Both the position numbers and the translations under genes were made by a program. From IMG/VR virus record IMGVR_UViG_3300032214_000715, positions 1 through 64,000 of that record: a DNA stretch of 64,000 bases; one strand, written 5' to 3'. This document shows positions 8,655 through 60,931 of this stretch, piece after piece (the first letter of the stretch is position 1; each line of letters opens with the position of its first letter). Under the pieces are notes generated by a model. It was given only the letters and a program-made list of their open reading frames with translations, was not told the origin of the DNA and made no database searches.

Positions 8655-9371
8655 ATGCGTATAAGCGAAATTCAACGACAACAGTCTGACACTCAACCGC
8701 TACACATGGAAGTTGATTATGAATCAGTGACTGGACTCAAGCCTGTGCCGCAGAATCCCGAGTACGCTTATACGATTGTCAACGTCAGTGATCAATTAAG
8801 TTTAGTTCAAGCCGACACTAGCGTTGAATTTTATCATGTAAAGAACGACGGCGCTCGATTCATAGGGTTTCTAAATCTTAGAAGAATCGCTCATCGCGGA
8901 TTGAAGAACCCAGTACAAGTTAGCAATGTCGCTTTAGATAGTGACTTTCGTAATCGCGGCGTAGGGTTGATGATGTATGGTGTGATATTGGGTCTTGGTC
9001 ACACTATAGTCGCTGATGATTCTCAAACATCCGAATCGCGCAAGCTGTGGGTACGTCTGTGGAACATGCCCGGAGTTACTGTACGTGGCATGATAGATGT
9101 GTTGAGTAGTTATGTTGACCCAGAGAAAGACAACTCATGGAACAATGAGGCTAAACAAATCAAGTCGCAACTCAAGCGCATAAAAGCACAACCACTTCAA
9201 GATTTTAATCGTAGGCGTGATCGTTATGGTGATGAATGGGAACGATACTCTTTTGAAGTCATGCCAAAGACCGACGGTAGTGAGTTGACTGCTCCCGGAA
9301 TATCAATCTACAGTCGCAATAGTTCATACGATGACTACGATCCTGTTGGTCTGTATGCTACTATGAATTGA
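8655..9371 (+). CDS. GNAT-fold acetyltransferase, capsid-targeting-like N-terminus
   Basis: VALDSDFRNRGVG acetyl-CoA motif A, SQT..SRKLW; MRISEI start. Confidence 0.7.
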   Translation: MRISEIQRQQSDTQPLHMEVDYESVTGLKPVPQNPEYAYTIVNVSDQLSLVQADTSVEFYHVKNDGARFIGFLNLRRIAHRGLKNPVQVSNVALDSDFRNRGVGLMMYGVILGLGHTIVADDSQTSESRKLWVRLWNMPGVTVRGMIDVLSSYVDPEKDNSWNNEAKQIKSQLKRIKAQPLQDFNRRRDRYGDEWERYSFEVMPKTDGSELTAPGISIYSRNSSYDDYDPVGLYATMN

Positions 9372-9426
9372 CTACTTGATTGCGTTAATAAATCTATACA
9401 GATAAATACTCATAGTACTATACACT

Positions 9427-10146
9427 ATGAGAGCCGATCAATTTATTACCGAAATAGAAGCACTGAGCAAGGACGAGTTTAATCCTCGGGCCGAACAGTT
9501 CAGAATTCAACATATATCCACTCAGTGGTTTGCTGATGCCAAGCCTCTAAAGTCACTGCCTGGGTACACTTACTATCTCAAGCCTGACTTCACTGGGTCT
9601 ATAGCAGTGTATATTTTTGATCCCAAGAATCCCGACATTTTCGTTGGAGAGTTAACCGCACACCCATACTGGGCTATGGATAACGCAGAGCGTAAATCAG
9701 TGTATGGGACTCCCACACTAATGGTACATCCGGATTATAAAAACCAGGGTATAGCAACAGAGCTTTATAAGTTAGTATTGCTGCCACCACCAGAGGGCGC
9801 GGGCATCACTCTACTATCAGACTCAGCGCAAACAAGTGGTGGCGCAGGAGTATGGGCATCATTAGCTAAAAAGATTCCAGGCGTGTCAGTAATTGGGTTG
9901 TTGAGAATGAGGAAACGAGACGAATACAGTGATACTGAACTAAAATTATATAATCATCTGTTTGGTGATTTGGGCGCCACCTATTATGCTCAGACCTTAC
10001 ACTATTACTTTTACTGGATTCCAGTTAGGAAAATGGGCCGTCGTTTAGAGAACGCCGTTAAAGACTCACTTGTAAAAATTTATCCCAAGGCTCATCACAG
10101 AATGTACGATAGCTTTTTAATGGCGCGATGGATGAGTGAACAATGA
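9427..10146 (+). CDS. GNAT-fold acetyltransferase, capsid-targeting-like N-terminus
   Basis: VHPDYKNQGIAT motif A, SDSAQTSGGAGVW; MRADQFITE; late promoter 9402-9408. Confidence 0.72.
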   Translation: MRADQFITEIEALSKDEFNPRAEQFRIQHISTQWFADAKPLKSLPGYTYYLKPDFTGSIAVYIFDPKNPDIFVGELTAHPYWAMDNAERKSVYGTPTLMVHPDYKNQGIATELYKLVLLPPPEGAGITLLSDSAQTSGGAGVWASLAKKIPGVSVIGLLRMRKRDEYSDTELKLYNHLFGDLGATYYAQTLHYYFYWIPVRKMGRRLENAVKDSLVKIYPKAHHRMYDSFLMARWMSEQ

Positions 10147-33614: not shown

Positions 33615-33821
33615 TTAGTACATCTTTTTTGGAAGTTCCTGACTATCTAGATATTTTTTCCAGCGATTACGAGCTTTGCTCTTTGCTACTTTTTTATCTA
33701 TGCTGGGCTTTACATAAAATTCACGTTCTCGTAGTGTTTGTAGCAAACCACTATCGGCTACTTTCTTTTTGAACTTACGCATCGCAATTTCGAAATTGTC
33801 TTTTGTATTAACTACCTTCAT
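33615..33821 (-). CDS. rpsU: Ribosomal protein S21
   Basis: FEIAMRKFKKKV..SG....REFYVKPS. Confidence 0.88.
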   Translation of the reverse strand: MKVVNTKDNFEIAMRKFKKKVADSGLLQTLREREFYVKPSIDKKVAKSKARNRWKKYLDSQELPKKMY

Positions 33822-35032
33822 TGTTTCTCCAACAAAAACTTAGCGTCTTGTACTAATTCCGCTGTTATATTTATACTCTTTATCTTTTCTTTAAGATAAC
33901 TCTGTATATTGTACATATGAGGCAAAAGCACTCTTTCTATTTCACTGTGTAAGCCTCTTGCCCCAGTTTTTAGAGATAAACAATTTTCTGCTATAAGTTC
34001 TATAGCATTGTTATCAAATGAAAGTGATATTCCATCTAACTGAAATAGATACTTGTATTGATCAATATAGCTATTTTTTACATTTAACAAAATTTGAATC
34101 AATTGTTCTTTTGTCAATTCTCCAATAGACACTCTGCTGGTAAATCTTCCAGTAAATTCCGGTATCATTCCAAATTTAGTCAAGTCATCAGGAGTAACTA
34201 GTGGTAAATAATCCTGTTCTTTTACGTCAGCTTTTATTTTTGCTCCAAAGCCAATACTGTTTCCATCTACTCGTTTAGCTATGATTTCATTTAATCCAAC
34301 GAATGCTCCTCCGGCAATAAAGAGAATATTAGTAGTATCCACTTCTATCATATCGCTATTTGGGTTTTTTCGCTTGCTGCCCTGTGGCACTCTACACATA
34401 GTGCCTTCTACTAATTTAAGCAGTGCTTGTTGAACACCCTCACCGCTAACGTCACGTGTGATACTGGCACTTTCACTTTTACGAGCAACTTTGTCGATTT
34501 CGTCTATAAATACTATACCACGTTGAGCCTTGTCAACGTCTCCATCGGCGGCAGCCAATAGTCTAACAATCATACTTTCAACATCGTCGCCAACATAGCC
34601 AGCTTCAGTTAAGCTAGTAGCATCGGCCACGACAAATGGAACATCCAGATACTCGGCAACCGTTTTTGCTAACAATGTTTTTCCACTGCCAGTGGGTCCC
34701 AATACAAGAACATTACTTTTTTGTATTTTGATGTTTGAATCTTTATTGTTGATTCTCTTGTAATGATTGCTCACGGCAACACTTAGTATCATTTTGGCGT
34801 GTTCTTGCCCAATAACATAACGATCCAAGAACGATTTGATATCATCTGGATACAAACTCGTCTTTACATTTTGTAAATCGTTGATGCTATCGGACTCATC
34901 CAATAGTAACTCATTACATAGTTCAACGCAGTCATTACATATGGCTGTTTTTTCACCTACGATTAGCTTTTTTACTACACTCTTGTGTTTACCACAAAAG
35001 GAGCATTCTTGGAAATAAAGTACTTCGCTCAT
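33818..35032 (-). CDS. clpX: ClpX ATPase
   Basis: CSFC zinc domain, [23 protein letters not shown] loop, GARGL. Confidence 0.97.
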
Positions 35033-39044: not shown

Positions 39045-39245
39045 TTATTTTAACCCAAAGTGTTCTTTAATTTCTTTAGCAGTTGCTGTATCACCTTTGA
39101 ACACAGCAATCTTTACGCATTCAAACAGAATTAAGTCGGCGAACTTTTCAATATTCTCATAACCAACCAATGCTCGTTCCCTCGGTGCACCACCAATAGG
39201 AACTGCCCTAGCCTGTTCGGCAAGTTCTCTAACTAGTCCGTTCAT
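39045..39245 (-). CDS. MNERIKE-family paralog
   Basis: ELAEQA, KFADLILFEC, IKEHFGLK. Confidence 0.75.
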   Translation of the reverse strand: MNGLVRELAEQARAVPIGGAPRERALVGYENIEKFADLILFECVKIAVFKGDTATAKEIKEHFGLK

Positions 39246-39619
39246 CGTGGATCCATTCCGCCATCACTGACCACATCGCTATAAGTAGCACCGCCGCCTT
39301 CTTGAAGTTTCTTCTTTAGACGACGGATTTCAGCCTTGAGATTACGATTCTCATAGTCTGCCCAACCGGCACGTTCCTGCATCTCTGTCATTTGCTTGAC
39401 GAAGTCTCGATCACTTGGTGTTAGGTCTTCTTCAGGTGTGATGATGAATTTACCATGATCCCAATCAAAGCCCATCTGGATATTTTTTACCTTAACAGTA
39501 GGTAGTCCACCAACAGTAGAGTATGGCAGTTTGATCTTAATCACCACTTCGGGGTCTTCGTAGTGACCATCACGGTGGTGGCAATCAACAATGTGCTTTA
39601 GTTCACTTAGTTTCATCAT
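39242..39619 (-). CDS. Hypothetical protein
   Basis: 125 aa coupled ORF after GGGAGTTGA junction. Confidence 0.6.
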   Translation of the reverse strand: MMKLSELKHIVDCHHRDGHYEDPEVVIKIKLPYSTVGGLPTVKVKNIQMGFDWDHGKFIITPEEDLTPSDRDFVKQMTEMQERAGWADYENRNLKAEIRRLKKKLQEGGGATYSDVVSDGGMDPR

Positions 39620-39921
39620 TCAACTCCCGTTCTTCTTACGTTGTTGGATATAGTATTCATCCATCTTCTTTTTCCATTCTTCGGGTGTAGGATCACGAAA
39701 GTATCCTTGTGGCTTACTTGAACCACGCCCGCTTTTGAAACTATTGTATGCTGTTCTAAAACTCACGATTCAACTCCTATTCAACACTGCCTGTAGAGCA
39801 TAGACAGCATCGTGTGTAGTAAAGAGTATAACATCATTTTCAATTACTGTATAGAGGTTAGGTTCTACCTCATTGGCTTCATTTACCCGCTTTTCAACTT
39901 TTAGAACTATAGTTTCAGTTT

Positions 39922-40155
39922 TCACGATTCAACTCCAAAAAATGTTTTATGTAAGGCTTCGAGATAATCGTCTGTGCCCATATGCGAATTGCCATTGTCA
40001 ATCTTACTATAGATGCCAGCACATTCTTTCACAATCAACTCGGCGAGTTTTTCCGCAAACGCATATAATTCAGGGTTGGCAGAAATTTTCCTGTTGACTG
40101 TTTCTTCTGCCATAAACTTTGCCTGATTCGCAAGTTCCTTAATTCGTTCGTTCAT
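39922..40155 (-). CDS. MNERIKE-family paralog
   Basis: MNERIKELA, LAELIVKEC, FFGVES. Confidence 0.8.
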   Translation of the reverse strand: MNERIKELANQAKFMAEETVNRKISANPELYAFAEKLAELIVKECAGIYSKIDNGNSHMGTDDYLEALHKTFFGVES

Positions 40156-40273
40156 TTTGTTATCCTATATCCTACATACCAGAGATCAATACGGAAAAAC
40201 CAATTGCCTTTATTTTTACCAAAGCCGATTCGTAGCATACGGTCATCTTTGTCTAGTAAGATTTTTGTCAACA

Positions 40274-40492
40274 TTATAAGAACAGACCTTTTCTGTCTAC
40301 GCCAGTTTCATAGTATTCTTTTGCGGCCCCACTGTAATACATTACCTCTCCACATTGAGCACACTTATAGCGATGTAGGTCCAAGTCCACTGTGGTACTA
40401 ACAGTTTCAGACTCCCACTCACCTTCAGTTTCTTCACCAAAGCAATTTGTGGTTACCCATGTCTGTTTGGTTCTACTATGTGAGCAAGTCAT
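40274..40492 (-). CDS. Zn-ribbon hypothetical protein
   Basis: CAQC motif. Confidence 0.55.
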   Translation of the reverse strand: MTCSHSRTKQTWVTTNCFGEETEGEWESETVSTTVDLDLHRYKCAQCGEVMYYSGAAKEYYETGVDRKGLFL

Positions 40493-40770
40493 TCTTTAAC
40501 TCCGAAATGTTGTTTCAATCGTTCTACACACACATCCTGTCCATCAATAAAGGCCTTGTCTATTGCGCTGGCCTGCTCATACAGAATATCCGATTCTCCG
40601 CCTGGCCAACAAACCATAATACATTCCCGAACAATCAACTCGGCGAACTTTTCAATTCTGTCATCCCATAGTTCCACAGTTTCAACATGCTGTGGAGGAT
40701 TTGACATTAGATTTCTAGTGCTAATATGAGCACCGGCCTCTTTAGCAAGTTTCCTAATTCGTTCGTTCAT
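40489..40770 (-). CDS. MNERIKE-family paralog
   Basis: MNERIRKLA, KFAELIVREC, HFGVKE. Confidence 0.8.
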   Translation of the reverse strand: MNERIRKLAKEAGAHISTRNLMSNPPQHVETVELWDDRIEKFAELIVRECIMVCWPGGESDILYEQASAIDKAFIDGQDVCVERLKQHFGVKE

Positions 40771-40872
40771 TTGCAATCTCTTTTAATCTAAGGACAAAAT
40801 CTGTTTGTTCGTATTCACCATAAACATTAACGAGCCTTGAGGCTAACCATAGTAGAAATTCTTTATCACTCA

Positions 40873-41061
40873 TTATTCAACTCCAAAGTATTCCTTGATC
40901 ATTGGTCCAGGATATTCACCACCGTCGTGGGCATAGTTGCCAATCATAACACACTTTTTGATAATCAACTCGGCGAATTTATCCTGCCACTTGTCTCGGT
41001 CAAACGCTGGACTAAATTCCTGAGTAGCCTGTTTAGCCAGTTCTTTAATTCGTTCGTTCAT
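40873..41061 (-). CDS. MNERIKE-family paralog
   Basis: MNERIKELA, KFAELII, YFGVE. Confidence 0.8.
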   Translation of the reverse strand: MNERIKELAKQATQEFSPAFDRDKWQDKFAELIIKKCVMIGNYAHDGGEYPGPMIKEYFGVE

Positions 41062-41062
41062 A

Positions 41063-41257
41063 TCAATCATCCCTACAATTACAATCACCAGTGCCGAAAC
41101 GAAGTTCTCCGCAATATGGACAACCTATACGATAATGTGGATCTAACTCGTTGAGAACACGATAGTATTCTGTTGTGCCAACAGGGCCGCCGCAATCCAT
41201 AGCAATTGCTACATGTGAGTAGCCTTTACTCAACAGTTCCTTAATTCGTTCGTTCAT
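41063..41257 (-). CDS. Chimeric ORF: MNERIKEL N-terminus plus Zn-finger
   Basis: MNERIKELL then CPYC...CNC. Confidence 0.65.
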   Translation of the reverse strand: MNERIKELLSKGYSHVAIAMDCGGPVGTTEYYRVLNELDPHYRIGCPYCGELRFGTGDCNCRDD

Positions 41258-41430
41258 AATGTTAGACCGCCCTTCTTTTCAAGACTTGCTTGATGCTCTT
41301 GTGGACTACGATTTACACACAACCCACCATCGTAAAGCAGGGGTTGTCCACACCAAGCTAACCATTCTAACCCACTCGGAGTAAATTTAGTTCCTGTGAC
41401 ATTCCAAGCCCGCCTGAATTGTTCGTTCAT
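41254..41430 (-). CDS. 58-aa ORF starting MNEQ (below ORF-track cutoff)
   Basis: Own translation MNEQFRRAWNV...KGGLTL; ATGA overlaps both ends. Confidence 0.55.
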   Translation of the reverse strand: MNEQFRRAWNVTGTKFTPSGLEWLAWCGQPLLYDGGLCVNRSPQEHQASLEKKGGLTL

Positions 41431-41750
41431 ACCATACTCCTTCCAATCTCAGCCGCAGCCCTGACGATGGCGCGGCGTGTGGCGGCATATCCATCTTCGC
41501 CGCACTTTTCCCAGTCCTCTCTTGAGTAGCGCAGGGTGTAGAAGGGTAGGCATTTCACCGCCAGCCTGAAAGCATCGCCGTCGTCGGTGAGGGGGTTCCA
41601 AAGCGTTGGGTAGTCACTTGTTCTAGTCGGATGCCTTGACCTAAGATAGAACTCGAAAGCCGAAGGGAACAAAGGAAATCGTTTTTCAATGAAATCGTAC
41701 TTAGCCGCCTTCGCAGCGTATTCCAGCAGTTCTCTATCTGTATCAATCAT
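41427..41750 (-). CDS. Hypothetical protein, higher GC
   Basis: WNPLTDDGDAFRLAV; ends RAAAEIGRSMV. Confidence 0.65.
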   Translation of the reverse strand: MIDTDRELLEYAAKAAKYDFIEKRFPLFPSAFEFYLRSRHPTRTSDYPTLWNPLTDDGDAFRLAVKCLPFYTLRYSREDWEKCGEDGYAATRRAIVRAAAEIGRSMV

Positions 41751-41751
41751 T

Positions 41752-41946
41752 TTACTTACTCTGAATACAACGGTATTCGTTAGTTTTGAGACTCAATTGC
41801 CTAGCAGCATCATCGCACATTTCTCGTGCTGTCTTTTTGCCCATACGACCCTCTTCCATATGGAACTCCCCAATAGGTCGCCAATCGTACTTACAGACAG
41901 CAGGCACACAGGCAATCACGGTCCAAATTACAAGAATGTAGGTCAT
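41752..41946 (-). CDS. Small secreted/membrane hypothetical
   Basis: Hydrophobic N-terminus, Cys pairs. Confidence 0.55.
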   Translation of the reverse strand: MTYILVIWTVIACVPAVCKYDWRPIGEFHMEEGRMGKKTAREMCDDAARQLSLKTNEYRCIQSK

Positions 41947-42186
41947 GGTTCAATTACCTTTCCACTTACTATAGATCCAACTTGTTAATAAAGTCACGCC
42001 GGATGCTACCATAATAATACCAACAATTCCAACGGTTGCTATTAAAATGTCTATTAGAGCGCCAGCCACTTCACTCACCTCTCCACGCACTATAAATCAT
42101 CTGATAAGCACAATAGGGAATCATAAGTGTGACTCCAGTAATGGCCAATAGCCAAACGGTTATAAACACATCCATCAAAATGTTAA

Positions 42187-42321
42187 TCATTTCAGTGATC
42201 TCCTAAATTCTCTGTAAGCATCATATAGCAAGGGAATTACCAGTGACAGGAACATAGCCATAGAACCCAGCAATATAATTATCATGACTAATTGTACCAC
42301 AAAAATAAAAATGCTTTCCAT
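42187..42321 (-). CDS. Small single-TM peptide
   Basis: MESIFIFVVQLVMIIILL; coupled to upstream stop. Confidence 0.45.
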   Translation of the reverse strand: MESIFIFVVQLVMIIILLGSMAMFLSLVIPLLYDAYREFRRSLK

Positions 42322-42545
42322 TATTTTACTCCAAAATGTTCCCGAATCGCACCTTCTGCAATTCGCAATCCATCTTCCCATTCATCTTTAGAATTCATAG
42401 ATTCGTTTTGAATTGCTTGAATACATTCCTGAATAATTAGTTCAGCAAACATTTTATGATCGACCAAACGCTGGCTGTCACCACGATACCAGTAATCATG
42501 GACTTCTGAAGCCTGCTCTAATAGTTCTTGGAGTCTTTCGTTCAT
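42321..42545 (-). CDS. MNERIKE-family paralog
   Basis: MNERLQELL, MFAELIIQEC, HFGVK. Confidence 0.8.
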   Translation of the reverse strand: MNERLQELLEQASEVHDYWYRGDSQRLVDHKMFAELIIQECIQAIQNESMNSKDEWEDGLRIAEGAIREHFGVK

Positions 42546-42790
42546 AGTCCCAGTACCTTTCGTTCTTGCTCAGTAAGTTTAGCAAGGGCACGTTTACGGA
42601 GTTCACCGTTTTTGTATTCTTCCAGTTCTGTCAGATCATCCAAGATAACAATCTCTCGCTCGTAGATTTCGTCAAACTTGTTTTTGGCTTTCCAAGCATC
42701 CGCAGCTTCCTTAGTTGCCACATAGTACAGATGGTTGTGACGTTCGCCGCCGTCCCACACTTGAATGTCCCAGCATTTGATGATTTTCAT
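42542..42790 (-). CDS. Hypothetical protein
   Basis: MKIIKCWDIQ; ends ALAKLTEQERKVLGL. Confidence 0.6.
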   Translation of the reverse strand: MKIIKCWDIQVWDGGERHNHLYYVATKEAADAWKAKNKFDEIYEREIVILDDLTELEEYKNGELRKRALAKLTEQERKVLGL

Positions 42791-43044
42791 TCCGAAACTC
42801 CGAAACGCCACTTGATCATTTGACTGAATGTTAGTTGAGCATTAGTCCAAATCTTACCCTCATTATCGGTCTTTGCCTTTGTTAGATTAACCACGAGGTC
42901 TTTTTCAACAATATCAATACATTCCCTAACAATCAACTCGGCGAACTTTCTTTGTGCTTTAGTAAGGCCAGTGGGATCAAATCCGTTATATTCTGCTGAA
43001 ATGATTCCAGCCTCAACAGCAAGTTCTTTAATTCGTTCGTTCAT
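42787..43044 (-). CDS. MNERIKE-family paralog
   Basis: MNERIKELA, KFAELIVREC, RFGVSE. Confidence 0.8.
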   Translation of the reverse strand: MNERIKELAVEAGIISAEYNGFDPTGLTKAQRKFAELIVRECIDIVEKDLVVNLTKAKTDNEGKIWTNAQLTFSQMIKWRFGVSE

Positions 43045-43049
43045 CGTCT

Positions 43050-43105
43050 GCTCCTGATTTCTAACTTAGTGAATATAGTATAACAGGAAACGAAATTATT
43101 GTCAA
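43050..43105 (-). promoter_or_regulatory. Early promoter/RBS cassette copy 1
   Basis: TTGACA-17-TATACT...GGAG; 50/56 identical to 48230-48285. Confidence 0.85.
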
Positions 43106-43112
43106 GTGCTGG

Positions 43113-43583
43113 TCATTTATTACCCTGGGATACGCTACTAGCAGAACTAGAACTACTTGAACCAGAACCTGACGAAACCAATTGTAGTAGTCTAGCAGTT
43201 CCACTAGCATCGCTTTGTTGAAAGATTGCGACAAGTTTTGATTGTAGTGTTTGACCAGTATTGTCACGCCAACTGACAACCACTTGAATGTTCTTGTGTT
43301 GAGCGTTTGGTTGTGACACTGTATATCTTACACTATAAGTAGCAGATTTTCCCAGTGTGTCGGGCAAAGTTTTTTCACCTACTCCAAGTTCTGGGTCAGT
43401 CCAAGACCGTGTTCGTAGATTTTCAATAACACCTTGAGCAATGAATCCTGCTTCAGATTGTTGTTTAGCCGCTGAACTTGCGGTAAATTGAATACCCTGT
43501 AGTCTAGTCAGAGCCAACAGCCCGCCGCCGATTATGATCGTTGCGATCATAATATCAATTAGTCCTACTCCACGCTGATTCAT
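43113..43583 (-). CDS. Type IV pilin-like protein (PilV-like minor pilin)
   Basis: MNQRG/VGLIDIMIATIIIGGGLLAL prepilin class III signal; A...A...IENLR helix. Confidence 0.75.
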   Translation of the reverse strand: MNQRGVGLIDIMIATIIIGGGLLALTRLQGIQFTASSAAKQQSEAGFIAQGVIENLRTRSWTDPELGVGEKTLPDTLGKSATYSVRYTVSQPNAQHKNIQVVVSWRDNTGQTLQSKLVAIFQQSDASGTARLLQLVSSGSGSSSSSSASSVSQGNK

Positions 43584-43777
43584 TCTGAAACTCCGAAATG
43601 TTTTTTAGCAGCATTCCAACCATAGCAGAAGGCTTCCCATTCTGCTTCGTCATACCCTAGTGCTTCATGGTTTCTGGGCCTATCTCTGAGGTCTGCGGTT
43701 TCTTTAACATATTCTTCGAACATGTCTACTTGTTCTTTAGTATCCCATTCCCAACCTGGTTCGCCGTATCCCATCAC
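43580..43777 (-). CDS. Chimeric ORF with family C-terminus only
   Basis: Unrelated N-terminus, ends KKHFGVSE. Confidence 0.65.
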   Translation of the reverse strand: MMGYGEPGWEWDTKEQVDMFEEYVKETADLRDRPRNHEALGYDEAEWEAFCYGWNAAKKHFGVSE

Positions 43778-44019
43778 TTGACTCCGAAATGTTCTTTAAT
43801 CAATTGCGCCGTTTCCCATAGTGGGTCTGCTTCATGATATGAATATTCTTTGCGATTGACAATAGCCAAACATTCCCTAATAATCAAGTTAGCGAATCGT
43901 TGGGCACTGGCTTCACCTTGCCAATATACGGTAGGAGGATTACCATCAAGTGCAGGATCACCATCGTAGTGGCGAGTTCCGTGGGCTTGGCGATATAGTT
44001 CTTTCAATCTTTCGTTCAT
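43774..44019 (-). CDS. MNERIKE-family paralog
   Basis: MNERLKELY, RFANLIIREC, IKEHFGVK. Confidence 0.8.
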   Translation of the reverse strand: MNERLKELYRQAHGTRHYDGDPALDGNPPTVYWQGEASAQRFANLIIRECLAIVNRKEYSYHEADPLWETAQLIKEHFGVK

Positions 44020-44396
44020 ACTGTCTCCAATTCATCAATTTTTTCGTATGCGACAACCGCTGGTAGTAGTAAAATTGCGGCTGGGTCTTCACTTAGAACT
44101 GCCCATACTCGCAATTTATCACTAGACATATCTAGGTATTTGGCAGCATCATCATATGCGATTAGTGCTAGGATCGCATCCCGAGCCGCATTCCAAACCG
44201 CAGCCCTCGCCGCAGCCCGCCCCGTCAGCGCCAGAGCCGCATCCCAAGCCGCAATCCGAGCCGCATCATAAGCCGCATCATAAGCCGCATCATAAGCCGC
44301 ATCCCAAGCCGCATCCCAAACTTCGGGATGTGATTTTGAAGACTCCAACACGCGATCAATATGTGTCGCATTTGGCAAATGACTCCAGGCGTTCAT
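44016..44396 (-). CDS. Ala-rich protein with (W/Y)DAA tandem repeats
   Basis: 12-bp tandem units GCGGCTT(GG/AT)GAT, about 44236-44318. Confidence 0.7.
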   Translation of the reverse strand: MNAWSHLPNATHIDRVLESSKSHPEVWDAAWDAAYDAAYDAAYDAARIAAWDAALALTGRAAARAAVWNAARDAILALIAYDDAAKYLDMSSDKLRVWAVLSEDPAAILLLPAVVAYEKIDELETV

Positions 44397-44632
44397 TTTA
44401 CAAACCTACCGTCCTCTTCAATGTAAATATCAAAATGTGATTCAATATTGCTGGCAATAGCAAGTCCTGGTCCAGACAGTTTAGGTTTGTCATACTCGTA
44501 TGCGATATTGATACATTCCCTGATCAACAACTCGGCGAACTTTAGTTGAATGCGTTCATAGTAATCTGCACAGTCGGAATCAACTATTTCGTCCTGCGCC
44601 TGTTCGTAAAGTTTTATAATTCGTTCGTTCAT
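44393..44632 (-). CDS. MNERIKE-family paralog
   Basis: MNERIIKLY, KFAELLIREC; ends GRFVK. Confidence 0.78.
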   Translation of the reverse strand: MNERIIKLYEQAQDEIVDSDCADYYERIQLKFAELLIRECINIAYEYDKPKLSGPGLAIASNIESHFDIYIEEDGRFVK

Positions 44633-44645
44633 TATCAACTTTCTG

Positions 44646-44978
44646 TTAAGTATTCTCAGTTTGGCACTGCCCGTCTGGACCATAGGTACAAGCATAGACA
44701 GCAGAACTATCAGTTAGTGGCTGCTCAAAGATACGGTAGAAACAATATTGCTCCCCTTCTGTGTCAAAGAAGAACATACTACCATTGACCAACCCTGCCA
44801 TGATATTATAGAACTCATCAGTCTCACCGTAAAGGGCTTTGACTTCTGCCATGATAAACTTCCAAATTTCGTCATCTTCGGGTTTATCGTACTCTAACCC
44901 ATTGCCTACATAAACAGCAGGTTTACCCATTTGCTTCACAGCAAGACTTTGAATTTCATTCCATTGACAAACTTTCAT
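44646..44978 (-). CDS. Hypothetical protein
   Basis: Starts in ATGA overlap after FGVEE. Confidence 0.6.
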   Translation of the reverse strand: MKVCQWNEIQSLAVKQMGKPAVYVGNGLEYDKPEDDEIWKFIMAEVKALYGETDEFYNIMAGLVNGSMFFFDTEGEQYCFYRIFEQPLTDSSAVYACTYGPDGQCQTENT

Positions 44979-45232
44979 TCCTCAACTCCGAAATGTTGTT
45001 TAATGTTATCAATACATTTTTTTACGCCCCTATTATGTGCGTTAGAATGCGTACCGACTGTACCGACAAAATTAACATTACATTGCTCAACACATTCTGC
45101 CACAATGAGTTCGGCGAACTTTTTTCGGTCAAATACTGTCCGGATAGTGCTCAATCCACCAGCATTCATATCAAAGTCGCAAGGCACCTTTACCCAACAT
45201 TGGGATTCAAGTTCTTTAATTCGTTCGTTCAT
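44975..45232 (-). CDS. MNERIKE-family paralog
   Basis: MNERIKELE, KFAELIVAEC, IKQHFGVEE. Confidence 0.8.
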   Translation of the reverse strand: MNERIKELESQCWVKVPCDFDMNAGGLSTIRTVFDRKKFAELIVAECVEQCNVNFVGTVGTHSNAHNRGVKKCIDNIKQHFGVEE

Positions 45233-45468
45233 ACCATACCCTTTCCAATCTCTGCTGCGCGGATGTGCCAGGCGCACCATGAGGCTCCGACGCCGCGTTC
45301 GAGTCCAGAGTTCCGATGAGCGATCTTGTCGCACTCCTTCGCGCACTGCTCCCGCTCATCAGCCCGGACAAGGGCGGCGAAGCGTTCAAGTTGCCTGTCG
45401 AAATAGACGTCGGTGTGTTTTGCGGAAAACCCAGCCTGCTTGGCAAGTTGTCGAATTTGTTCGTTCAT
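45229..45468 (-). CDS. MNEQ-start paralog, higher GC
   Basis: FAALVRADEREQCA; ends RAAEIGKGMV like 41427. Confidence 0.72.
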   Translation of the reverse strand: MNEQIRQLAKQAGFSAKHTDVYFDRQLERFAALVRADEREQCAKECDKIAHRNSGLERGVGASWCAWHIRAAEIGKGMV

Positions 45469-45698
45469 TCCGAAACTCCGAAATGTCTGGCAATATGCTC
45501 TGCGGCGGTTAATTTGGTTTGGGGGTGTGGATAATTTACTGTGACTGCCATACATTCACTGATCAACAACTCGGCAAACTTTTCAAATTCTGAATACGAA
45601 ACAAACCGAGCCATTCCTCTCGGATCGCCATCTAATATAGCCATTCTACCGAAACGTATATTAGCCTGTTCGGCAAGTAGTTTAATTCGTTCGTTCAT
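45465..45698 (-). CDS. MNERIKE-family paralog
   Basis: MNERIKLLA, KFAELLISEC, HFGVSE. Confidence 0.8.
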   Translation of the reverse strand: MNERIKLLAEQANIRFGRMAILDGDPRGMARFVSYSEFEKFAELLISECMAVTVNYPHPQTKLTAAEHIARHFGVSE

Positions 45699-45719
45699 TC
45701 TTTAACTCCGAGATGTTGT

Positions 45720-45959
45720 TTAATCAATCCCCACTTGACGAGTACAGCCTTTGCCACATTGTTCTTGCCAACTGGTAGAACCTTGACAGTTGGTAAAGTA
45801 GCGAATGATGCCACCGTCACTGAATCGATAGACAGTACAGCCTTCGTGAGTAAACAGTTTATCCACTACAAACTCTTTGCCTACAGCAGTGCTGGTTTCA
45901 GCAGGCTTGCTACAGCCCGCCAACAGGGTGATAGCGAGGATAGTCAATACAGTTTTCAT
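45720..45959 (-). CDS. Small lipoprotein
   Basis: MKTVLTILAITLLAGC lipobox. Confidence 0.75.
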   Translation of the reverse strand: MKTVLTILAITLLAGCSKPAETSTAVGKEFVVDKLFTHEGCTVYRFSDGGIIRYFTNCQGSTSWQEQCGKGCTRQVGID

Positions 45960-46207
45960 TCTTCAACTCCAAAATGTGTTTTGATCATTGTAGCACAACT
46001 ATCAGCCGTTGCTTTAGTTTTGCGAGCCATTTCACCTGTGTTGGTGATTGTAGCCATATTAGCAACAAACTCACACTTGCCTACGCATTCTGCCACAATC
46101 AACTCAGCGAACTTTTCAAACTGCTGACTATATGAAAAAGTACCATCTTGCTCATAATGAAGTTCAAACCCAGCCTGTTCGGCTAGTTCCTTGATTCGTT
46201 CGTTCAT
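45956..46207 (-). CDS. MNERIKE-family paralog
   Basis: MNERIKELAEQAG, KFAELIVAEC, HFGVEE. Confidence 0.8.
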   Translation of the reverse strand: MNERIKELAEQAGFELHYEQDGTFSYSQQFEKFAELIVAECVGKCEFVANMATITNTGEMARKTKATADSCATMIKTHFGVEE

Positions 46208-46359
46208 TTTACAAACCTTCCCCAAATGAATTTCAGCGATAGACCATCCATAAATGCCTGCTTGAACGGTGTTAGAGGTGCCCAAATAATGTAGCCAATT
46301 ACAAGACCTTCAAGCCAAGCAATGACAACAAAGATAGCAATGGTTAGATCACTCATCAT
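46204..46359 (-). CDS. 51-aa membrane peptide ending GRFVK (below cutoff)
   Basis: Own translation MMSDLTIAIFVVIAW...FIWGRFVK; ATGA overlaps. Confidence 0.5.
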   Translation of the reverse strand: MMSDLTIAIFVVIAWLEGLVIGYIIWAPLTPFKQAFMDGLSLKFIWGRFVK

Positions 46360-46601
46360 TCAACCTCGAACAACAGATGCTCACCTTGACTACGGATGCG
46401 AACAACCTTACGACCTTCGATTCGATAACCAATACCAATAAAAGGTCCACCGCTGGGGTCAACAAACCCTAGATTGTCGTAGTCAATACGCTCTTGACCT
46501 TCTTGACCACCATAACGCCAGTATTGTAGATCACCGATAATGGTGTAAGTGTTGTCACTAATCTTTACGAATTGGTATTCAACACCATTACGATTACGCA
46601 T
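46356..46601 (-). CDS. Hypothetical protein
   Basis: MRNRNGVEYQF; FVDPSGGPFI. Confidence 0.6.
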   Translation of the reverse strand: MRNRNGVEYQFVKISDNTYTIIGDLQYWRYGGQEGQERIDYDNLGFVDPSGGPFIGIGYRIEGRKVVRIRSQGEHLLFEVE

Positions 46602-46842
46602 TTTCAACTCCAAATCTTTCTTGAATTTTCGTAACACAGTCTCTACGGAATGCGTCTTCAATTTGATTCCTGTAATCAATGTAACCAGGAGGCAAGTTTT
46701 CTACAATGTGTGTACATTCACGTACAACGTATTTCGCGAATTTCACTAATTCTGCATTAGTGAAGGTCCAACTTTGTAGCGTAGGTTGATCCTTCAACAC
46801 CTCTAACGCAAGGTCAAAAATAATGTCGTTTTCCTTGTCCAT
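46594..46842 (-). CDS. Divergent MNERIKE-family paralog
   Basis: KFAKYVVREC, RFGVENA. Confidence 0.7.
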   Translation of the reverse strand: MDKENDIIFDLALEVLKDQPTLQSWTFTNAELVKFAKYVVRECTHIVENLPPGYIDYRNQIEDAFRRDCVTKIQERFGVENA

Positions 46843-47213
46843 TATACTTCCTTCATTTCATCAACGTGCTTACACTTGTGCCTAAACTGGTAGCCGGGAC
46901 AAGAACAGGACCAACCCTTGCCAAACTTGCTAAGAAAATACTTCTTACCGTTACTACCTGACACTTCGATAACTTGACCTACAGGCTTTTCTACAGACTT
47001 AGGAAAATATACTTCGTCACTCTCACCCTTCTTGGGGAGGACAACAAACTTGCGACCTTTAGAGTCAAAGTTCATGGGCTTGCTGAACTTGATCAGTGCC
47101 TTAGTACCAGTCTTGATATAACCTACCATCTTACGCTTGTCGTCAGTAAGGTAGTAAACGTGATTAGGGACGTAGCTAGCGTCCCATTCTGTGACTTCTT
47201 GAAAGTATTTCAT
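46842..47213 (-). CDS. SWIM zinc-finger protein
   Basis: WSCSCPGYQFRHKCKH. Confidence 0.75.
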   Translation of the reverse strand: MKYFQEVTEWDASYVPNHVYYLTDDKRKMVGYIKTGTKALIKFSKPMNFDSKGRKFVVLPKKGESDEVYFPKSVEKPVGQVIEVSGSNGKKYFLSKFGKGWSCSCPGYQFRHKCKHVDEMKEV

Positions 47214-47633: not shown

Positions 47634-47686
47634 ACTCCGTTTTCTGACTATGAATACAGTATATCAAATACCGTATTATTTGTCAA
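47634..47686 (-). promoter_or_regulatory. Early promoter/RBS cassette copy 2 (diverged)
   Basis: TTGACA-17-TATACTGTATTCATAGTCAGAAAACGGAG. Confidence 0.8.
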
Positions 47687-48229: not shown

Positions 48230-48285
48230 GCTCCTGTTTTCTAACTCAGTGAATGCAGTATATCAGGAAACGAATTTATTGTCAA
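48230..48285 (-). promoter_or_regulatory. Early promoter/RBS cassette copy 3
   Basis: TTGACA-17-TATACT...GGAG. Confidence 0.85.
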
Positions 48286-49037
48286 ACTATTTGTAACTCT
48301 TTTGATAAGTCTGGAATATCAAAAATCCATTGTTCAAGCATGTATTCGCTATAGTAGTCAAATGGCATGTAAAAGTAGCCCGCATCGCCCCAGTTTTTCC
48401 CAAAACTGTTCTCAACGATAAACACTTTTTTGGAACTGTCGTATCCAACTAATAACACCGCGTGACCTTCTGATGATCCTACATCTTCGGTTATTATTGA
48501 ACGCTCTTCGGTCAAATCGTAAAATGATTCAAAAACTTCAATGCCAGAAACAACAGGATAATAATTATTTATGGCATCTATTGCGTCCGCGATACTGACC
48601 AATCGTTCATATTTAGTAATTTGTCTATGTTTTGCCTCAGCGTATGCTTCATCGCTTGGTTTAGCAAACAAATTGTTTAATGTATATGGCCAAATAGATT
48701 CTTTACACACTCCGTATGTTTTTAAGCCACGCAGACCACTTTTGATGCTGGCCCCACTGTCCCAAGTTACAGTGTCTTCGTATATTCGTGCGTTGTAATA
48801 TACAAACATTCTACTAAGTTCGGTATAGTGTTCTGGATATAAACGTTGAGTCATTAATTCATACGCACTCACCAACGCATTTCCGGTACAACTGCCAACT
48901 TGTTGTTGATTCTCAATCAACATTCCCCATTGACGCAAATCAATCGCATCGGCGGATTGTTTTCCAGAATTAGAATATATGTAATTGTTAATATCCGGAT
49001 CGCTGCTCTTGTATCTTGAAGTTTTTAAAATATTCAT
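48282..49037 (-). CDS. Papain-like cysteine protease (C1A)
   Basis: NQQQVGSCTG (Cys), GHAVLLVGY (His), ENSFG..WG..GY (Asn). Confidence 0.92.
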   Translation of the reverse strand: MNILKTSRYKSSDPDINNYIYSNSGKQSADAIDLRQWGMLIENQQQVGSCTGNALVSAYELMTQRLYPEHYTELSRMFVYYNARIYEDTVTWDSGASIKSGLRGLKTYGVCKESIWPYTLNNLFAKPSDEAYAEAKHRQITKYERLVSIADAIDAINNYYPVVSGIEVFESFYDLTEERSIITEDVGSSEGHAVLLVGYDSSKKVFIVENSFGKNWGDAGYFYMPFDYYSEYMLEQWIFDIPDLSKELQIV

Positions 49038-60841: not shown

Positions 60842-60931
60842 TGGCGGATAGTGTGAGATTCGAACTCACGATAGAATTTCTCCTATGACGGTTTAGTAGA
60901 CCGTTGGTTTCAGCCGCTCACCCAACTATCC
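60842..60931 (-). tRNA. tRNA-Ser, anticodon ACU, class II
   Basis: GGATAGT/ACTATCC acceptor, G73-CCA, ACGGT-CTACTAA-ACCGT, long variable arm, GTGAG-TTCGAAT-CTCAC. Confidence 0.9.

What the first reader, a model, noticed from the sequence alone, without database searches (positions are those of the whole stretch)
43113..43583. Phage-encoded PilV-like type IV pilin captured in the cassette array
Seen: class III signal NQRG/VGLID followed by a hydrophobic helix. Position +5 is Asp rather than the usual Glu, and +1 is Val rather than Phe. The gene starts in the ATGA overlap of an FGVSE junction. Known: minor pilins prime type IV pilus assembly and pili are common phage receptors. Inference: a dominant-negative or receptor-altering pilin for superinfection exclusion or motility control.
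Basis: partly seen in the sequence, partly recalled or inferred. Interest (0 to 1): 0.65.

Follow-up and report, generated by a model that had tools for sequence, protein, structure and literature searches.

The report
Phage-borne PilV-like minor pilin cassette
A giant freshwater phage carries a working-looking copy of a bacterial pilus-tip subunit (a PilV/GspI-class minor pilin), most likely used to alter or disable the host's type IV pili during infection; this resembles a recently described prophage trick, but with a different pilus subunit and in phages that look virulent.

Summary
ORF 43113-43583 (-) encodes a 156-aa prepilin: leader MNQRG, cleavage-site Gly, Val+1, Asp+5, a hydrophobic helix and a Ser-rich tail. 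Its ATG overlaps the stop of an upstream gene ending HFGVSE. It matches the PilV model TIGR02523 over its full length (E 4e-10, below the curated cut-off). Its model superposes on GspI-class tip pseudopilins (XcpV Z 9.8, EpsI Z 8.8).

The window is the start of a 239-kb contractile-tailed jumbo phage from a lake metagenome. Bacterial homologues (45-53% identity) are the last gene of betaproteobacterial minor-pilin operons, and one of them also has Val+1/Asp+5. So these deviations are inherited, not a phage adaptation.

The gene recurs in at least four related phage contigs (dN/dS 0.17-0.45), always as the last gene before a conserved sigma-70-type promoter. An unrelated T5-like phage lineage carries a homologue. 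In lake metagenomes, phage variants lacking exactly this ORF coexist with carriers. The record holds no other pilin and no prepilin peptidase.

Best reading, not tested: host PilD processes the protein, which enters the pilus-priming tip complex and changes or blocks the pilus as a phage receptor. The closest precedent is prophage P-FimU. I rate it a new variant of a known kind.

The parts
43113..43583 (-). PilV/GspI-class minor prepilin gene (156 aa, P0001)
   Evidence: ORF. TIGR02523 E 4.3e-10, 40.2 bits, profile 1-128/139. Model matches XcpV at Z 9.8 and EpsI at Z 8.8. There are 26 homologues. dN/dS is 0.17-0.45 among phage copies.
43569..43583 (-). Class III leader peptide MNQRG (5 residues); the predicted prepilin-peptidase cut lies after Gly5
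   Evidence: Sequence. Gly5 is invariant in 21 homologues. Cleavage itself is inferred.
43503..43568 (-). Hydrophobic N-terminal half of helix alpha1 (mature residues +1 to +22: VGLIDIMIATIIIGGGLLALTR), with Val+1 and Asp+5
   Evidence: The model has a helix over residues 8-26.
43413..43481 (-). Amphipathic second half of alpha1, containing the family signature AKQQSEAGFIAQGVIENLR. This is the part best conserved between phage and bacterial copies.
   Evidence: The columns Q41 Q42 S43 E44 A45 G46 F47 are invariant. Phage-to-bacterium identity is 0.70-0.80 here against 0.37-0.57 in the globular part.
43116..43175 (-). Ser-rich low-complexity C-terminal tail (SSGSGSSSSSSASSVSQGNK)
   Evidence: The tail is present in the 21 aligned homologues with variable length; two more distant bacterial copies, L013 and L014, lack it. 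In-frame 12-nt insertions occur at 43139-43142 in two metagenome runs. The model is disordered here, pLDDT <50.
43580..43594 (-). Translational-coupling joint: GGAG (43591-43594, inside the Phe-Gly-Val codons of the upstream gene) lies 7 nt before the pilin ATG, and the upstream stop and pilin start overlap as ATGA (43580-43583)
   Evidence: Read directly. The same ...TTCGGAGTTnnnGAATG joint is seen in L002 and L020.
43580..43777 (-). Upstream small ORF ending HFGVSE (64-65 aa). The same gene is found without the pilin behind it in contig L038.
43077..43105 (-). Sigma-70-type promoter (TTGACA, 17 nt, TATACT, TG-extended) immediately after the pilin stop. It drives the next MNERIKEL gene, so the pilin is the last gene of its transcription unit.
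   Evidence: 11 of 12 matches. The promoter is conserved behind the pilin in L002, L018, L019, L020 and in pilin-less L038.
47658..47686 (-). Nearest upstream strong sigma-70-type promoter; it is the presumed start of the unit that ends with the pilin gene
   Evidence: 11 of 12 matches with TG extension. No strong promoter or convincing terminator lies between it and the pilin on the minus strand. Assigning this promoter to the pilin unit is an inference.
39045..46857 (-). Array of small, tightly packed ORFs that includes 12 paralogues of the MNERIKEL...HFGVxE family; the pilin gene is embedded in it
   Evidence: The family has no Pfam or PHROG match. Synteny with related phage contigs is mosaic.

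Best explanation
The gene encodes a functional PilV/GspI-class minor prepilin that a jumbo myovirus of freshwater Betaproteobacteria captured from the host lineage. I propose the following sequence of events. The gene is transcribed by host RNA polymerase from a consensus sigma-70 promoter as the last, translationally coupled gene of an array of small genes. The protein inserts into the inner membrane. The host prepilin peptidase cuts it after Gly5, because the phage record holds no peptidase and no other pilin. Its conserved alpha1 helix then takes the place of the host PilV-like subunit in the minor-pilin priming complex that caps type IV pili. The exposed, divergent beta-domain with its Ser-rich tail changes the pilus tip, so the pilus no longer serves as a receptor. 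The benefit would be superinfection exclusion, protection of progeny from wasteful adsorption, or both. The following are shown here: the identity and fold class, the phage location, the bacterial origin and operon context, purifying selection, recurrence in two phage lineages, and the cassette-like presence/absence. The following are inferred: early expression, PilD processing, incorporation into the pilus, and the effect on phage adsorption.
For: Identity. TIGR02523 (PilV) matches at E 4.3e-10 over 128/139 profile positions, and all 21 family members hit this model. The AF2 model (core pLDDT 80-89) has a long alpha1 helix plus a beta-sheet. Its best structural matches are the GspK-GspI-GspJ tip complex (Z 11.1), XcpV (Z 9.8, rmsd 2.6 over 84 of 89 residues) and EpsI (Z 8.8, 81 of 84 residues).

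Phage location. The window is part of a 239-kb IMG/VR record. The record has a tail sheath (phrog_10581, E 2e-211), head decoration protein and RNR. It has no integrase hit.

Origin. Bacterial homologues of 45-53% identity are the last gene of GspH - ComP-type pilin - GspH - PpdB - PilX_N operons, including one in a betaproteobacterial MAG.

Dependence on host machinery. There is only one pilin-like ORF, no PF07963 hit and no PF01478 peptidase in the 239 kb.

Selection. dN/dS is 0.17-0.45 among five phage copies. The alpha1C segment is kept at 70-80% identity to bacterial copies, while the globular part has diverged to 37-57%.

Recurrence. The gene is present in four further jumbo-phage contigs with different upstream neighbours but the same downstream promoter. 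It is also present in T5-like phages. The tree requires two changes of the phage label.

Expression signals. 11/12 extended -10 promoters sit at 47686 and 43105, and an SD sequence plus an ATGA overlap precede the gene.

Precedent. Prophage P-FimU proteins replace FimU at the T4P tip and block tip-binding phages, and PilA-like genes occur in virulent phages (PMC12952977).
Against: There are no expression data, because no RNA run holds the stretch. Nothing tests processing, incorporation into pili or any effect on adsorption. The host is not identified. The bacteria with the nearest homologues have 59-70% GC, against 40% for the phage. The PilV model score (40 bits) is below the curated 52.2-bit cut-off, and Pfam N_methyl does not hit the window copy. 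The gene is dispensable: pilin-less variants coexist at similar or higher contig depth. It is not known whether this phage, or any competitor of it, uses pili as a receptor.
Confidence: 0.45

Rival explanations
1. Dominant-negative poison. The phage pilin is over-produced from the strong promoter, titrates host PilW/PilX-class partners or the assembly platform, and stops pilus assembly altogether. The infected cell becomes bald instead of carrying altered pili. The benefit, loss of the receptor, would be the same.
For: The promoters are near-consensus sigma-70 type. The phage brings only one of the four or five priming subunits, so stoichiometry would be skewed. Over-expression of FimU alone is reported to disrupt pilus assembly (PMC12952977 discussion). 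A paper listed (PMC13249403, title and abstract only) reports that minor-to-major pilin stoichiometry regulates pilus dynamics.
Against: The whole globular domain and the Ser-rich tail are under purifying selection, and a simple poison would not need them. Truncated N-terminal-only pilins, as described for some Pseudomonas phages, would be enough. Asp+5 and Val+1 are not phage-specific.
Confidence: 0.25
2. The target is a different type IV filament function: the DNA-uptake (competence) pilus or a type II secretion pseudopilus. The phage would block transformation or secretion rather than phage adsorption.
For: The bacterial operons contain a ComP_DUS-type pilin (PF16732). The best structural matches are T2SS GspI proteins. 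Two family members also touch the XpsI model weakly.
Against: The PilV model scores far better than XpsI (E 4e-10 against 5e-3). The bacterial operons have PilX_N and PpdB genes and show no T2SS core genes next to them. GspI leads the fold hits, ahead of several T4P minor pilins at Z 7-8.4; from my own knowledge, solved GspI-class T4P PilV structures are scarce.
Confidence: 0.1
3. Host-maintenance gene of the auxiliary-metabolic type. The phage supplies a priming pilin to keep pili working during infection, for flotation, attachment or motility, while host gene expression is shut off.
For: The gene looks fully functional and is conserved. P-FimU proteins do complement fimU mutants for twitching.
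Against: Supplying one subunit out of a multi-protein machine would not sustain it. The globular domain is strongly diverged from the bacterial copies. The gene is facultative in natural populations.
Confidence: 0.08
4. Neutral passenger. A host gene fragment was picked up by illegitimate recombination in a hyper-mosaic region and has no role for the phage.
For: The region is a recombination-prone array, and the ORF is absent from some variants.
Against: The ORF is intact in every copy seen. dN/dS is 0.17-0.45 with dS up to 0.76. The GC content has adapted to the phage (43% against 59-70% in bacteria). The gene keeps the same position relative to the promoter in five phage contigs. A second, unrelated phage lineage acquired a homologue separately.
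Confidence: 0.07

Closest known systems
P-FimU, prophage-encoded FimU-like minor pilins of F10-like Pseudomonas aeruginosa phages (Sztanko et al., Cell Rep 2026, PMC12952977)
   Same: Both are phage-encoded copies of a host T4P minor pilin that sits in the tip or priming complex. In both, the exposed parts diverge while the assembly parts are kept. Both are accessory genes.
   Different: This gene is PilV/GspI-class, not FimU/GspH-class. It lies in a jumbo myovirus without a detectable integrase, and a homologue lies in T5-like phages, so it is probably expressed during lytic infection rather than from a prophage. The hosts are uncultured freshwater Betaproteobacteria. No function has been tested.
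PilV / GspI / XcpV / EpsI / E. coli PpdC (the smallest core minor pilin or pseudopilin of type IV filament tip complexes)
   Same: It shares the class III signal, a long alpha1 helix and a small beta-sheet domain. Fold matches are Z 8.8-9.8. TIGR02523 matches over its full length. Bacterial homologues occupy the same place as ppdC, last in an H-J-K-I ordered operon (the E. coli gene order is from my own knowledge).
   Different: It scores below the curated PilV cut-off. It has a Ser-rich C-terminal tail. The window copy has Val+1 and Asp+5. It is encoded alone, without partner pilins.
PilA-like major-pilin genes in virulent phages and Xylella prophages (listed in PMC12952977, section read)
   Same: They are pilin genes carried by non-temperate phages, also proposed to act in superinfection exclusion.
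   Different: [quoted passage not shown]
Phage inhibitors of T4P such as Aqs1 of DMS3 (PMC13436744, abstract) and Tip of D3112 (from my own knowledge)
   Same: The presumed outcome is the same: the pilus receptor is disabled so that competing phages cannot adsorb.
   Different: Those are small cytoplasmic proteins that bind the assembly ATPase. This protein is a structural mimic that must be exported and processed.
T5 Llp and Cor-type lipoproteins (receptor-blocking proteins of virulent phages; from my own knowledge)
   Same: A lytic phage masks its own receptor early in infection. One of the two phage lineages carrying this pilin is T5-like.
   Different: Those work by direct binding to an outer-membrane receptor, not by replacing a filament subunit.

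Membership tests
Type IV prepilin (class III signal peptide, PilD substrate) | Gly at position -1 of the cleavage site, preceded by a short basic leader | tested here: met
   The leader is MNQRG. Gly5 is invariant in 21 homologues, and Arg is at -2 in the window copy.
Type IV prepilin (class III signal peptide, PilD substrate) | About 20 hydrophobic residues after the cut, forming the N-terminal half of alpha1 | tested here: met
   The sequence is VGLIDIMIATIIIGGGLLAL. The model has a helix over residues 8-26.
Type IV prepilin (class III signal peptide, PilD substrate) | Glu at +5 (and usually Phe or Met at +1) | tested here: not met
   The window copy has Asp+5 and Val+1. An acidic residue is kept in all homologues that have the N-terminus. 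Phe+1/Glu+5 alleles exist in the same phage clade, and Val+1/Asp+5 occurs in a bacterial operon copy, L021.
Type IV prepilin (class III signal peptide, PilD substrate) | Match to Pfam PF07963 (N_methyl) | tested here: not met
   There is no hit for the window copy. The close relative P0010, which has the Phe/Glu allele, carries a precomputed PF07963 hit.
Type IV prepilin (class III signal peptide, PilD substrate) | Cleavage and N-methylation by a prepilin peptidase | not testable with these tools
   This needs biochemistry. No PF01478 peptidase is found in the phage record, so a host enzyme would be required.
PilV / GspI-class minor pilin (NCBIfam TIGR02523) | Score at or above the curated cut-off (52.2 bits) | tested here: not met
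   The score is 40.2 bits, E 4.3e-10. All 21 family members hit the model, with a best E of 7e-12. I therefore treat this as a divergent subfamily that includes the bacterial members.
PilV / GspI-class minor pilin (NCBIfam TIGR02523) | Full-length alignment to the model | tested here: met
   Protein residues 3-130 align to profile positions 1-128 of 139.
PilV / GspI-class minor pilin (NCBIfam TIGR02523) | GspI-type fold (alpha1 packed on a small antiparallel sheet) | tested here: met
   VIA-align gives XcpV 5bw0_B Z 9.8 with rmsd 2.6 over 84/89 residues, and EpsI 2ret_A Z 8.8 over 81/84 residues. Foldseek's top hit is the XcpGHIJK pseudopilus model, but only at E 0.04.
PilV / GspI-class minor pilin (NCBIfam TIGR02523) | Encoded together with GspH-, GspJ- and GspK-class partner pilins | tested here: not met
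   This is met for the bacterial homologues. It is not met in the phage, which has a single pilin ORF and no partners.
Phage-encoded pilus-subunit mimics (P-FimU type) | Encoded by a phage and similar to a host T4P structural subunit | tested here: met
   The phage nature of the record is shown. Identity to bacterial operon copies is 45-53%.
Phage-encoded pilus-subunit mimics (P-FimU type) | FimU (GspH-class) identity | tested here: not met
   The best family is PilV. GspH appears only as a weak hit for one of the 21 members.
Phage-encoded pilus-subunit mimics (P-FimU type) | Expressed from a prophage | tested here: inconclusive
   No tyrosine integrase is found in the 239-kb record, but the record is only 68% complete. 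The second lineage is T5-like, and T5-like phages are virulent (from my own knowledge).
Phage-encoded pilus-subunit mimics (P-FimU type) | Incorporated at the pilus tip and blocks adsorption of pilus-binding phages | not testable with these tools
   This needs expression in a piliated host, tip labelling and adsorption assays.

The most novel reading that the evidence does not exclude
Two unrelated, probably virulent freshwater phage lineages (a jumbo myovirus and T5-like siphoviruses) independently captured the host's GspI-class tip pilin. They express it during lytic infection to re-tip or cap host type IV pili. This would extend receptor-subunit replacement from prophage P-FimU to a second tip subunit and to lytic phages. 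The pilin-plus/pilin-minus polymorphism in lakes would then reflect ongoing phage-against-phage competition.
Probability: 0.35. Interest if true: 0.7.

Novelty: new variant of a known kind. Interest (0 to 1): 0.6.

Why it matters
Only one experimentally studied case shows a phage replacing a receptor component with its own functional copy: P-FimU, published in 2026, from temperate Pseudomonas phages. If this PilV-class gene works in a similar way, three things follow. The strategy would not be limited to one subunit or to lysogeny. It would operate in abundant, uncultured lake phage-host systems. It would have arisen at least twice. The natural pilin-plus and pilin-minus variants, together with the Phe/Glu and Val/Asp N-terminal alleles, offer ready-made comparisons for testing how a single foreign tip pilin changes pilus function. 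The gene also links this jumbo phage, and a T5-like phage group, to Betaproteobacteria that carry this unusual minor-pilin operon.

Tried and rejected
- Complex prediction of the host PpdB/PilW-like protein (P0028, from L021) with the phage pilin gave 'no answer' (score 0.02). It is evidence neither for nor against binding.
- Megablast of window 40-47 kb against the INPHARED phage collection found nothing. tblastn of P0001 also found nothing. tblastn of the T5-like-phage copy P0018 found only chance hits to capsid genes. So no cultured or deposited phage in that collection carries this subfamily.
- The search for related loci in IMG/VR found no further copy.
- PHROGs has no family for the protein, and Pfam gave only a chance MTHFR_C hit.
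- A profile search of PDB sequences gave only chance RuBisCO hits. Foldseek against PDB gave the right top hit, but at a non-significant E of 0.04. The fold assignment therefore rests on VIA-align.
- No RNA-seq run holds the stretch, so expression could not be examined.
- The first look-up of the upstream gene with its GTG start failed. The ATG-start form worked.
- The taxonomy of the bacterial genomes reached through loci is not disclosed by the tool. The host assignment rests on one record title, 'uncultured beta proteobacterium'.
- I considered and rejected three ideas. Asp+5/Val+1 is not a phage-specific disabling change, because it is also in bacterial operon copies. The protein is unlikely to be a virion component, because it has a prepilin signal, sits in a sigma-70-driven small-gene array, and lies far from the structural genes. 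The ORF is not a chance ORF, because family, fold and selection all argue against that.
- I did not run the large representative-protein search. The family scans had already named the protein, and no claim here rests on an absence of relatives.

Full report
**1. The observation**

The minus-strand ORF at 43113-43583 encodes 156 residues. It begins MNQRG|VGLIDIMIATIIIGGGLLAL.

The preceding ORF (43580-43777) ends HFGVSE. Its TGA stop overlaps the pilin ATG, giving the sequence ATGA. The Phe-Gly-Val codons (TTCGGAGTT) contain a GGAG that lies 7 nt before the ATG, so the 'FGVSE junction' doubles as a ribosome-binding site.

A class-III-signal pattern finds only this ORF among 1835 ORFs in the whole 239-kb record.

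**2. What the protein is**

- **Family scans.** NCBIfam TIGR02523 (PilV) matches at E 4.3e-10 (40.2 bits) over profile positions 1-128 of 139. This is below the curated 52.2-bit cut-off. Pfam and PHROGs give nothing useful.
- **Relatives.** The word-based protein search found 26 relatives. Ten are at 71-95% identity and sixteen at 45-53%, and JGI names some of the latter PilV.
- **Conserved features.** In an alignment of 21 relatives, Gly-1 is invariant. Position +5 is always Asp or Glu. The motif QQSEAGF(I)AQ.VIE.LR in the second half of alpha1 is invariant, and a Ser-rich tail of variable length follows the globular part. All 21 hit TIGR02523.
- **Structure.** The AlphaFold2 model (mean pLDDT 70, core 80-89) shows a long, broken alpha1 helix and a sheet of four to five strands. 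An exhaustive structural comparison puts tip pseudopilins first. These are the GspK-GspI-GspJ complex (Z 11.1), XcpV (Z 9.8, rmsd 2.6 over 84/89 residues) and EpsI (Z 8.8, 81/84 residues). A series of type IV pilins follows. Foldseek gave the same top hit, but at a weak E of 0.04.

I conclude with high confidence (about 0.9) that this is a PilV/GspI-class minor prepilin of a divergent subfamily.

**3. Where it sits**

The window is the first 64 kb of a 239,163-bp IMG/VR record estimated to be 68% complete. The record encodes a 1166-aa tail sheath (phrog_10581, E 2e-211), head-decoration proteins, ribonucleotide reductase and a Clp/Lon-type protease. It has no tyrosine integrase. It is a contractile-tailed jumbo phage. 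It has no relative in the deposited-phage collection at the DNA level.

The pilin lies in a 39-47 kb block of tightly packed small minus-strand ORFs. Twelve of these belong to one paralogous family (MNERIKEL...KFAELIV.EC...HFGVxE), which is unknown to Pfam and PHROGs.

Three near-consensus, TG-extended sigma-70-type promoters stand on this strand at 48285, 47686 and 43105. The pilin is therefore the last gene of the unit that starts at 47686. The next promoter begins 8 nt after the pilin stop codon.

The record has no second pilin, no N_methyl hit and no prepilin peptidase.

**4. Relatives in bacteria**

Four contigs with 59-65% GC carry the homologue as the last gene of a minor-pilin operon. 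These are L007, L008, L021 and L009; L009 comes from an 'uncultured beta proteobacterium' MAG of Lake Loclat. The operon order is GspH-class, ComP_DUS-type pilin, GspH-class, PpdB (PilW/GspJ-class), PilX_N (GspK-like), then the PilV-like gene. The PilV-like gene is often present as two tandem paralogues.

This is the same order as the E. coli ppdA-ppdB-ygdB-ppdC operon (from my own knowledge). It supports the GspI-class assignment by position.

The L021 copy reads SRG|VGMVDVLIA, so Val+1 and Asp+5 are native to a bacterial clade. Inside the jumbo-phage clade, five variants carry the canonical GFSLLEIMI(V/A) instead. One of them has a Pfam N_methyl hit on record.

**5. Relatives in phages**

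- **Related jumbo-phage contigs.** Four contigs of the same jumbo-phage lineage (L002, L018, L019, L020) carry the gene at 76-96% nucleotide identity. They come from different lakes and studies. In each one the conserved TTGACA-N17-TATACT promoter and an MNERIKEL gene follow the pilin. The gene in front differs from contig to contig. The surrounding synteny is mosaic.
- **Selection.** Pairwise dN/dS over the first 136 codons is 0.17-0.45, with dS up to 0.76.
- **A second phage lineage.** A group of homologues including P0018 and P0022 lies in a different kind of phage (L005/L006). That phage has 44% GC, a tRNA array, ThyX, ligase, DnaB, primase and PolA. Its replication module resembles T5-like phages.
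- **Tree.** In a maximum-likelihood tree, this second phage clade is sister to the bacterial L021 clade (support 95/96). The jumbo clade sits on a long branch of its own. The phage label needs two changes on the tree.
- **Pattern of conservation.** Between phage and bacterial copies, the second half of alpha1 is the best-kept segment (70-80% identity). The globular part is the most diverged (37-57%).

**6. The cassette behaviour**

I laid the contigs of four lake or lagoon metagenome runs on 41500-45500. Three of the runs show a joint from 43107 to 43579 with four other letters between the two sides. These are contigs that lack exactly the pilin ORF. Their depths are 24, 10.5 and 11. In the same runs, pilin-bearing contigs have depths of 7-14, 9 and 3-4.

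A 9.5-kb assembly contig (L038) confirms this letter by letter. The same HFGVSE gene (99% identical) ends in TGA. After six bases, the same promoter follows. The 471-nt insert in the window is bounded by AATGA on both sides.

The Ser-rich tail also varies by in-frame 12-nt insertions. Parts of the stretch were found in runs from ten studies, mostly freshwater, lake, lagoon and sediment metagenomes; most of these runs hold only small shares of it.

**7. Mechanism**

The features found are: a complete prepilin that depends on host processing, kept assembly surfaces with diverged exposed surfaces, purifying selection, independent capture by two phage lineages, host-type promoters, and facultative carriage.

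The most economical reading is that the protein enters the host's pilus-priming complex in place of the host subunit. There it either alters the pilus tip or blocks assembly, which removes a phage receptor.

The published precedent is P-FimU. Prophage FimU mimics are built into the Pseudomonas T4P tip, leave motility intact and block tip-binding phages. The same paper lists PilA-like genes in virulent phages and recalls that virulent phages exclude superinfection early (PMC12952977).

My probabilities are 0.45 for the replacement or masking version and 0.25 for the dominant-negative version. Smaller shares go to a competence or T2SS target, to host maintenance, and to a neutral passenger. None of the functional steps was tested here.

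**8. Novelty**

No phage-encoded PilV/GspI-class pilin turned up in three literature searches of the held library. None turned up in the deposited-phage collection for this subfamily.

Relative to P-FimU, it is a different tip subunit, it lies in probably virulent phages, and the ecosystem is different. I therefore rate it a new variant of a known kind, with interest 0.6.

**Limits**

- The host is inferred only from homologues, and the GC gap between phage (40%) and those bacteria (59-70%) is large.
- The phage record is incomplete.
- Promoter assignments are consensus matches.
- The complex prediction gave no verdict and counts neither way.

Noticed in passing
window 39045-46857 (-), plus genome 85109-86176 (-): A paralogous family of about 14 small proteins (N-terminus MNERIKELA.QA, centre KFAELIV.EC, C-terminus HFGVxE) has no Pfam or PHROG match. 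The C-terminal Phe-Gly-Val codons carry the GGAG ribosome-binding site of the next gene, and the stop overlaps the next start as ATGA. Metagenome contig depth over one such N-terminal segment and its promoter (42840-43107) is 10-100 times that of its surroundings, so the module is shared by many lake phages.
   Followed up: partly
window 48257-48285, 47658-47686, 43077-43105 (-); similar about 60-nt modules near genome 66.5, 67.7, 68.2, 138.2, 223.3 and 223.7 kb: A near-identical TTGACA-N17-(TG)TATACT promoter module with a following AGGAG is repeated across the genome and conserved in related phage contigs.
   Followed up: partly
window 45720-45959 (-): A 79-aa predicted lipoprotein (MKTVLTILAITLLAGC..., lipobox LAGC; PF16225 DUF4884, phrog_6360) lies in the same promoter unit as the pilin. 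Small early lipoproteins are a classic type of receptor-blocking exclusion protein.
   Followed up: partly
L007 6680-10027; L008 7893-13196; L009 (same layout): In the bacterial loci whose PilV-like proteins carry the Ser-rich tail, a PAP2 / GT2+GtrA / PMT-family (GT-C) cluster lies between the pilin operon and ribD. In L014, whose protein lacks the tail, ribD follows directly. This could point to O-glycosylation of the tail, but the same gene set equally fits lipid A modification.
   Followed up: no
L005 3190-9972: The T5-like phage contig carries seven tRNA genes and an ARAGORN tmRNA call (9193-9607, tag ANDNTFALAA). Its pilin gene starts 28 nt after tRNA-Thr.
   Followed up: no
window 60842-60931 (-): A tRNA-Ser has the unusual anticodon ACT. 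The pilin's Ser-rich tail uses many AGT codons (read).
   Followed up: no
window 48282-49037 (-): A papain-family cysteine protease (Peptidase_C1, E 2e-15) is encoded just upstream of the small-gene array.
   Followed up: no
L009 7323-8552; L008 4376-5626; L007 4925 to about 6600: The bacterial loci carry two tandem, diverged paralogues of the PilV-like gene at the end of the minor-pilin operon.
   Followed up: partly
window 33818-35032 (-) and genome 190346-192622 (-): AAA+ Clp/Lon-type ATPase or protease genes are present, and ClpP genes occur in the related contig L002. The phage seems to bring its own proteolysis machinery.
   Followed up: no
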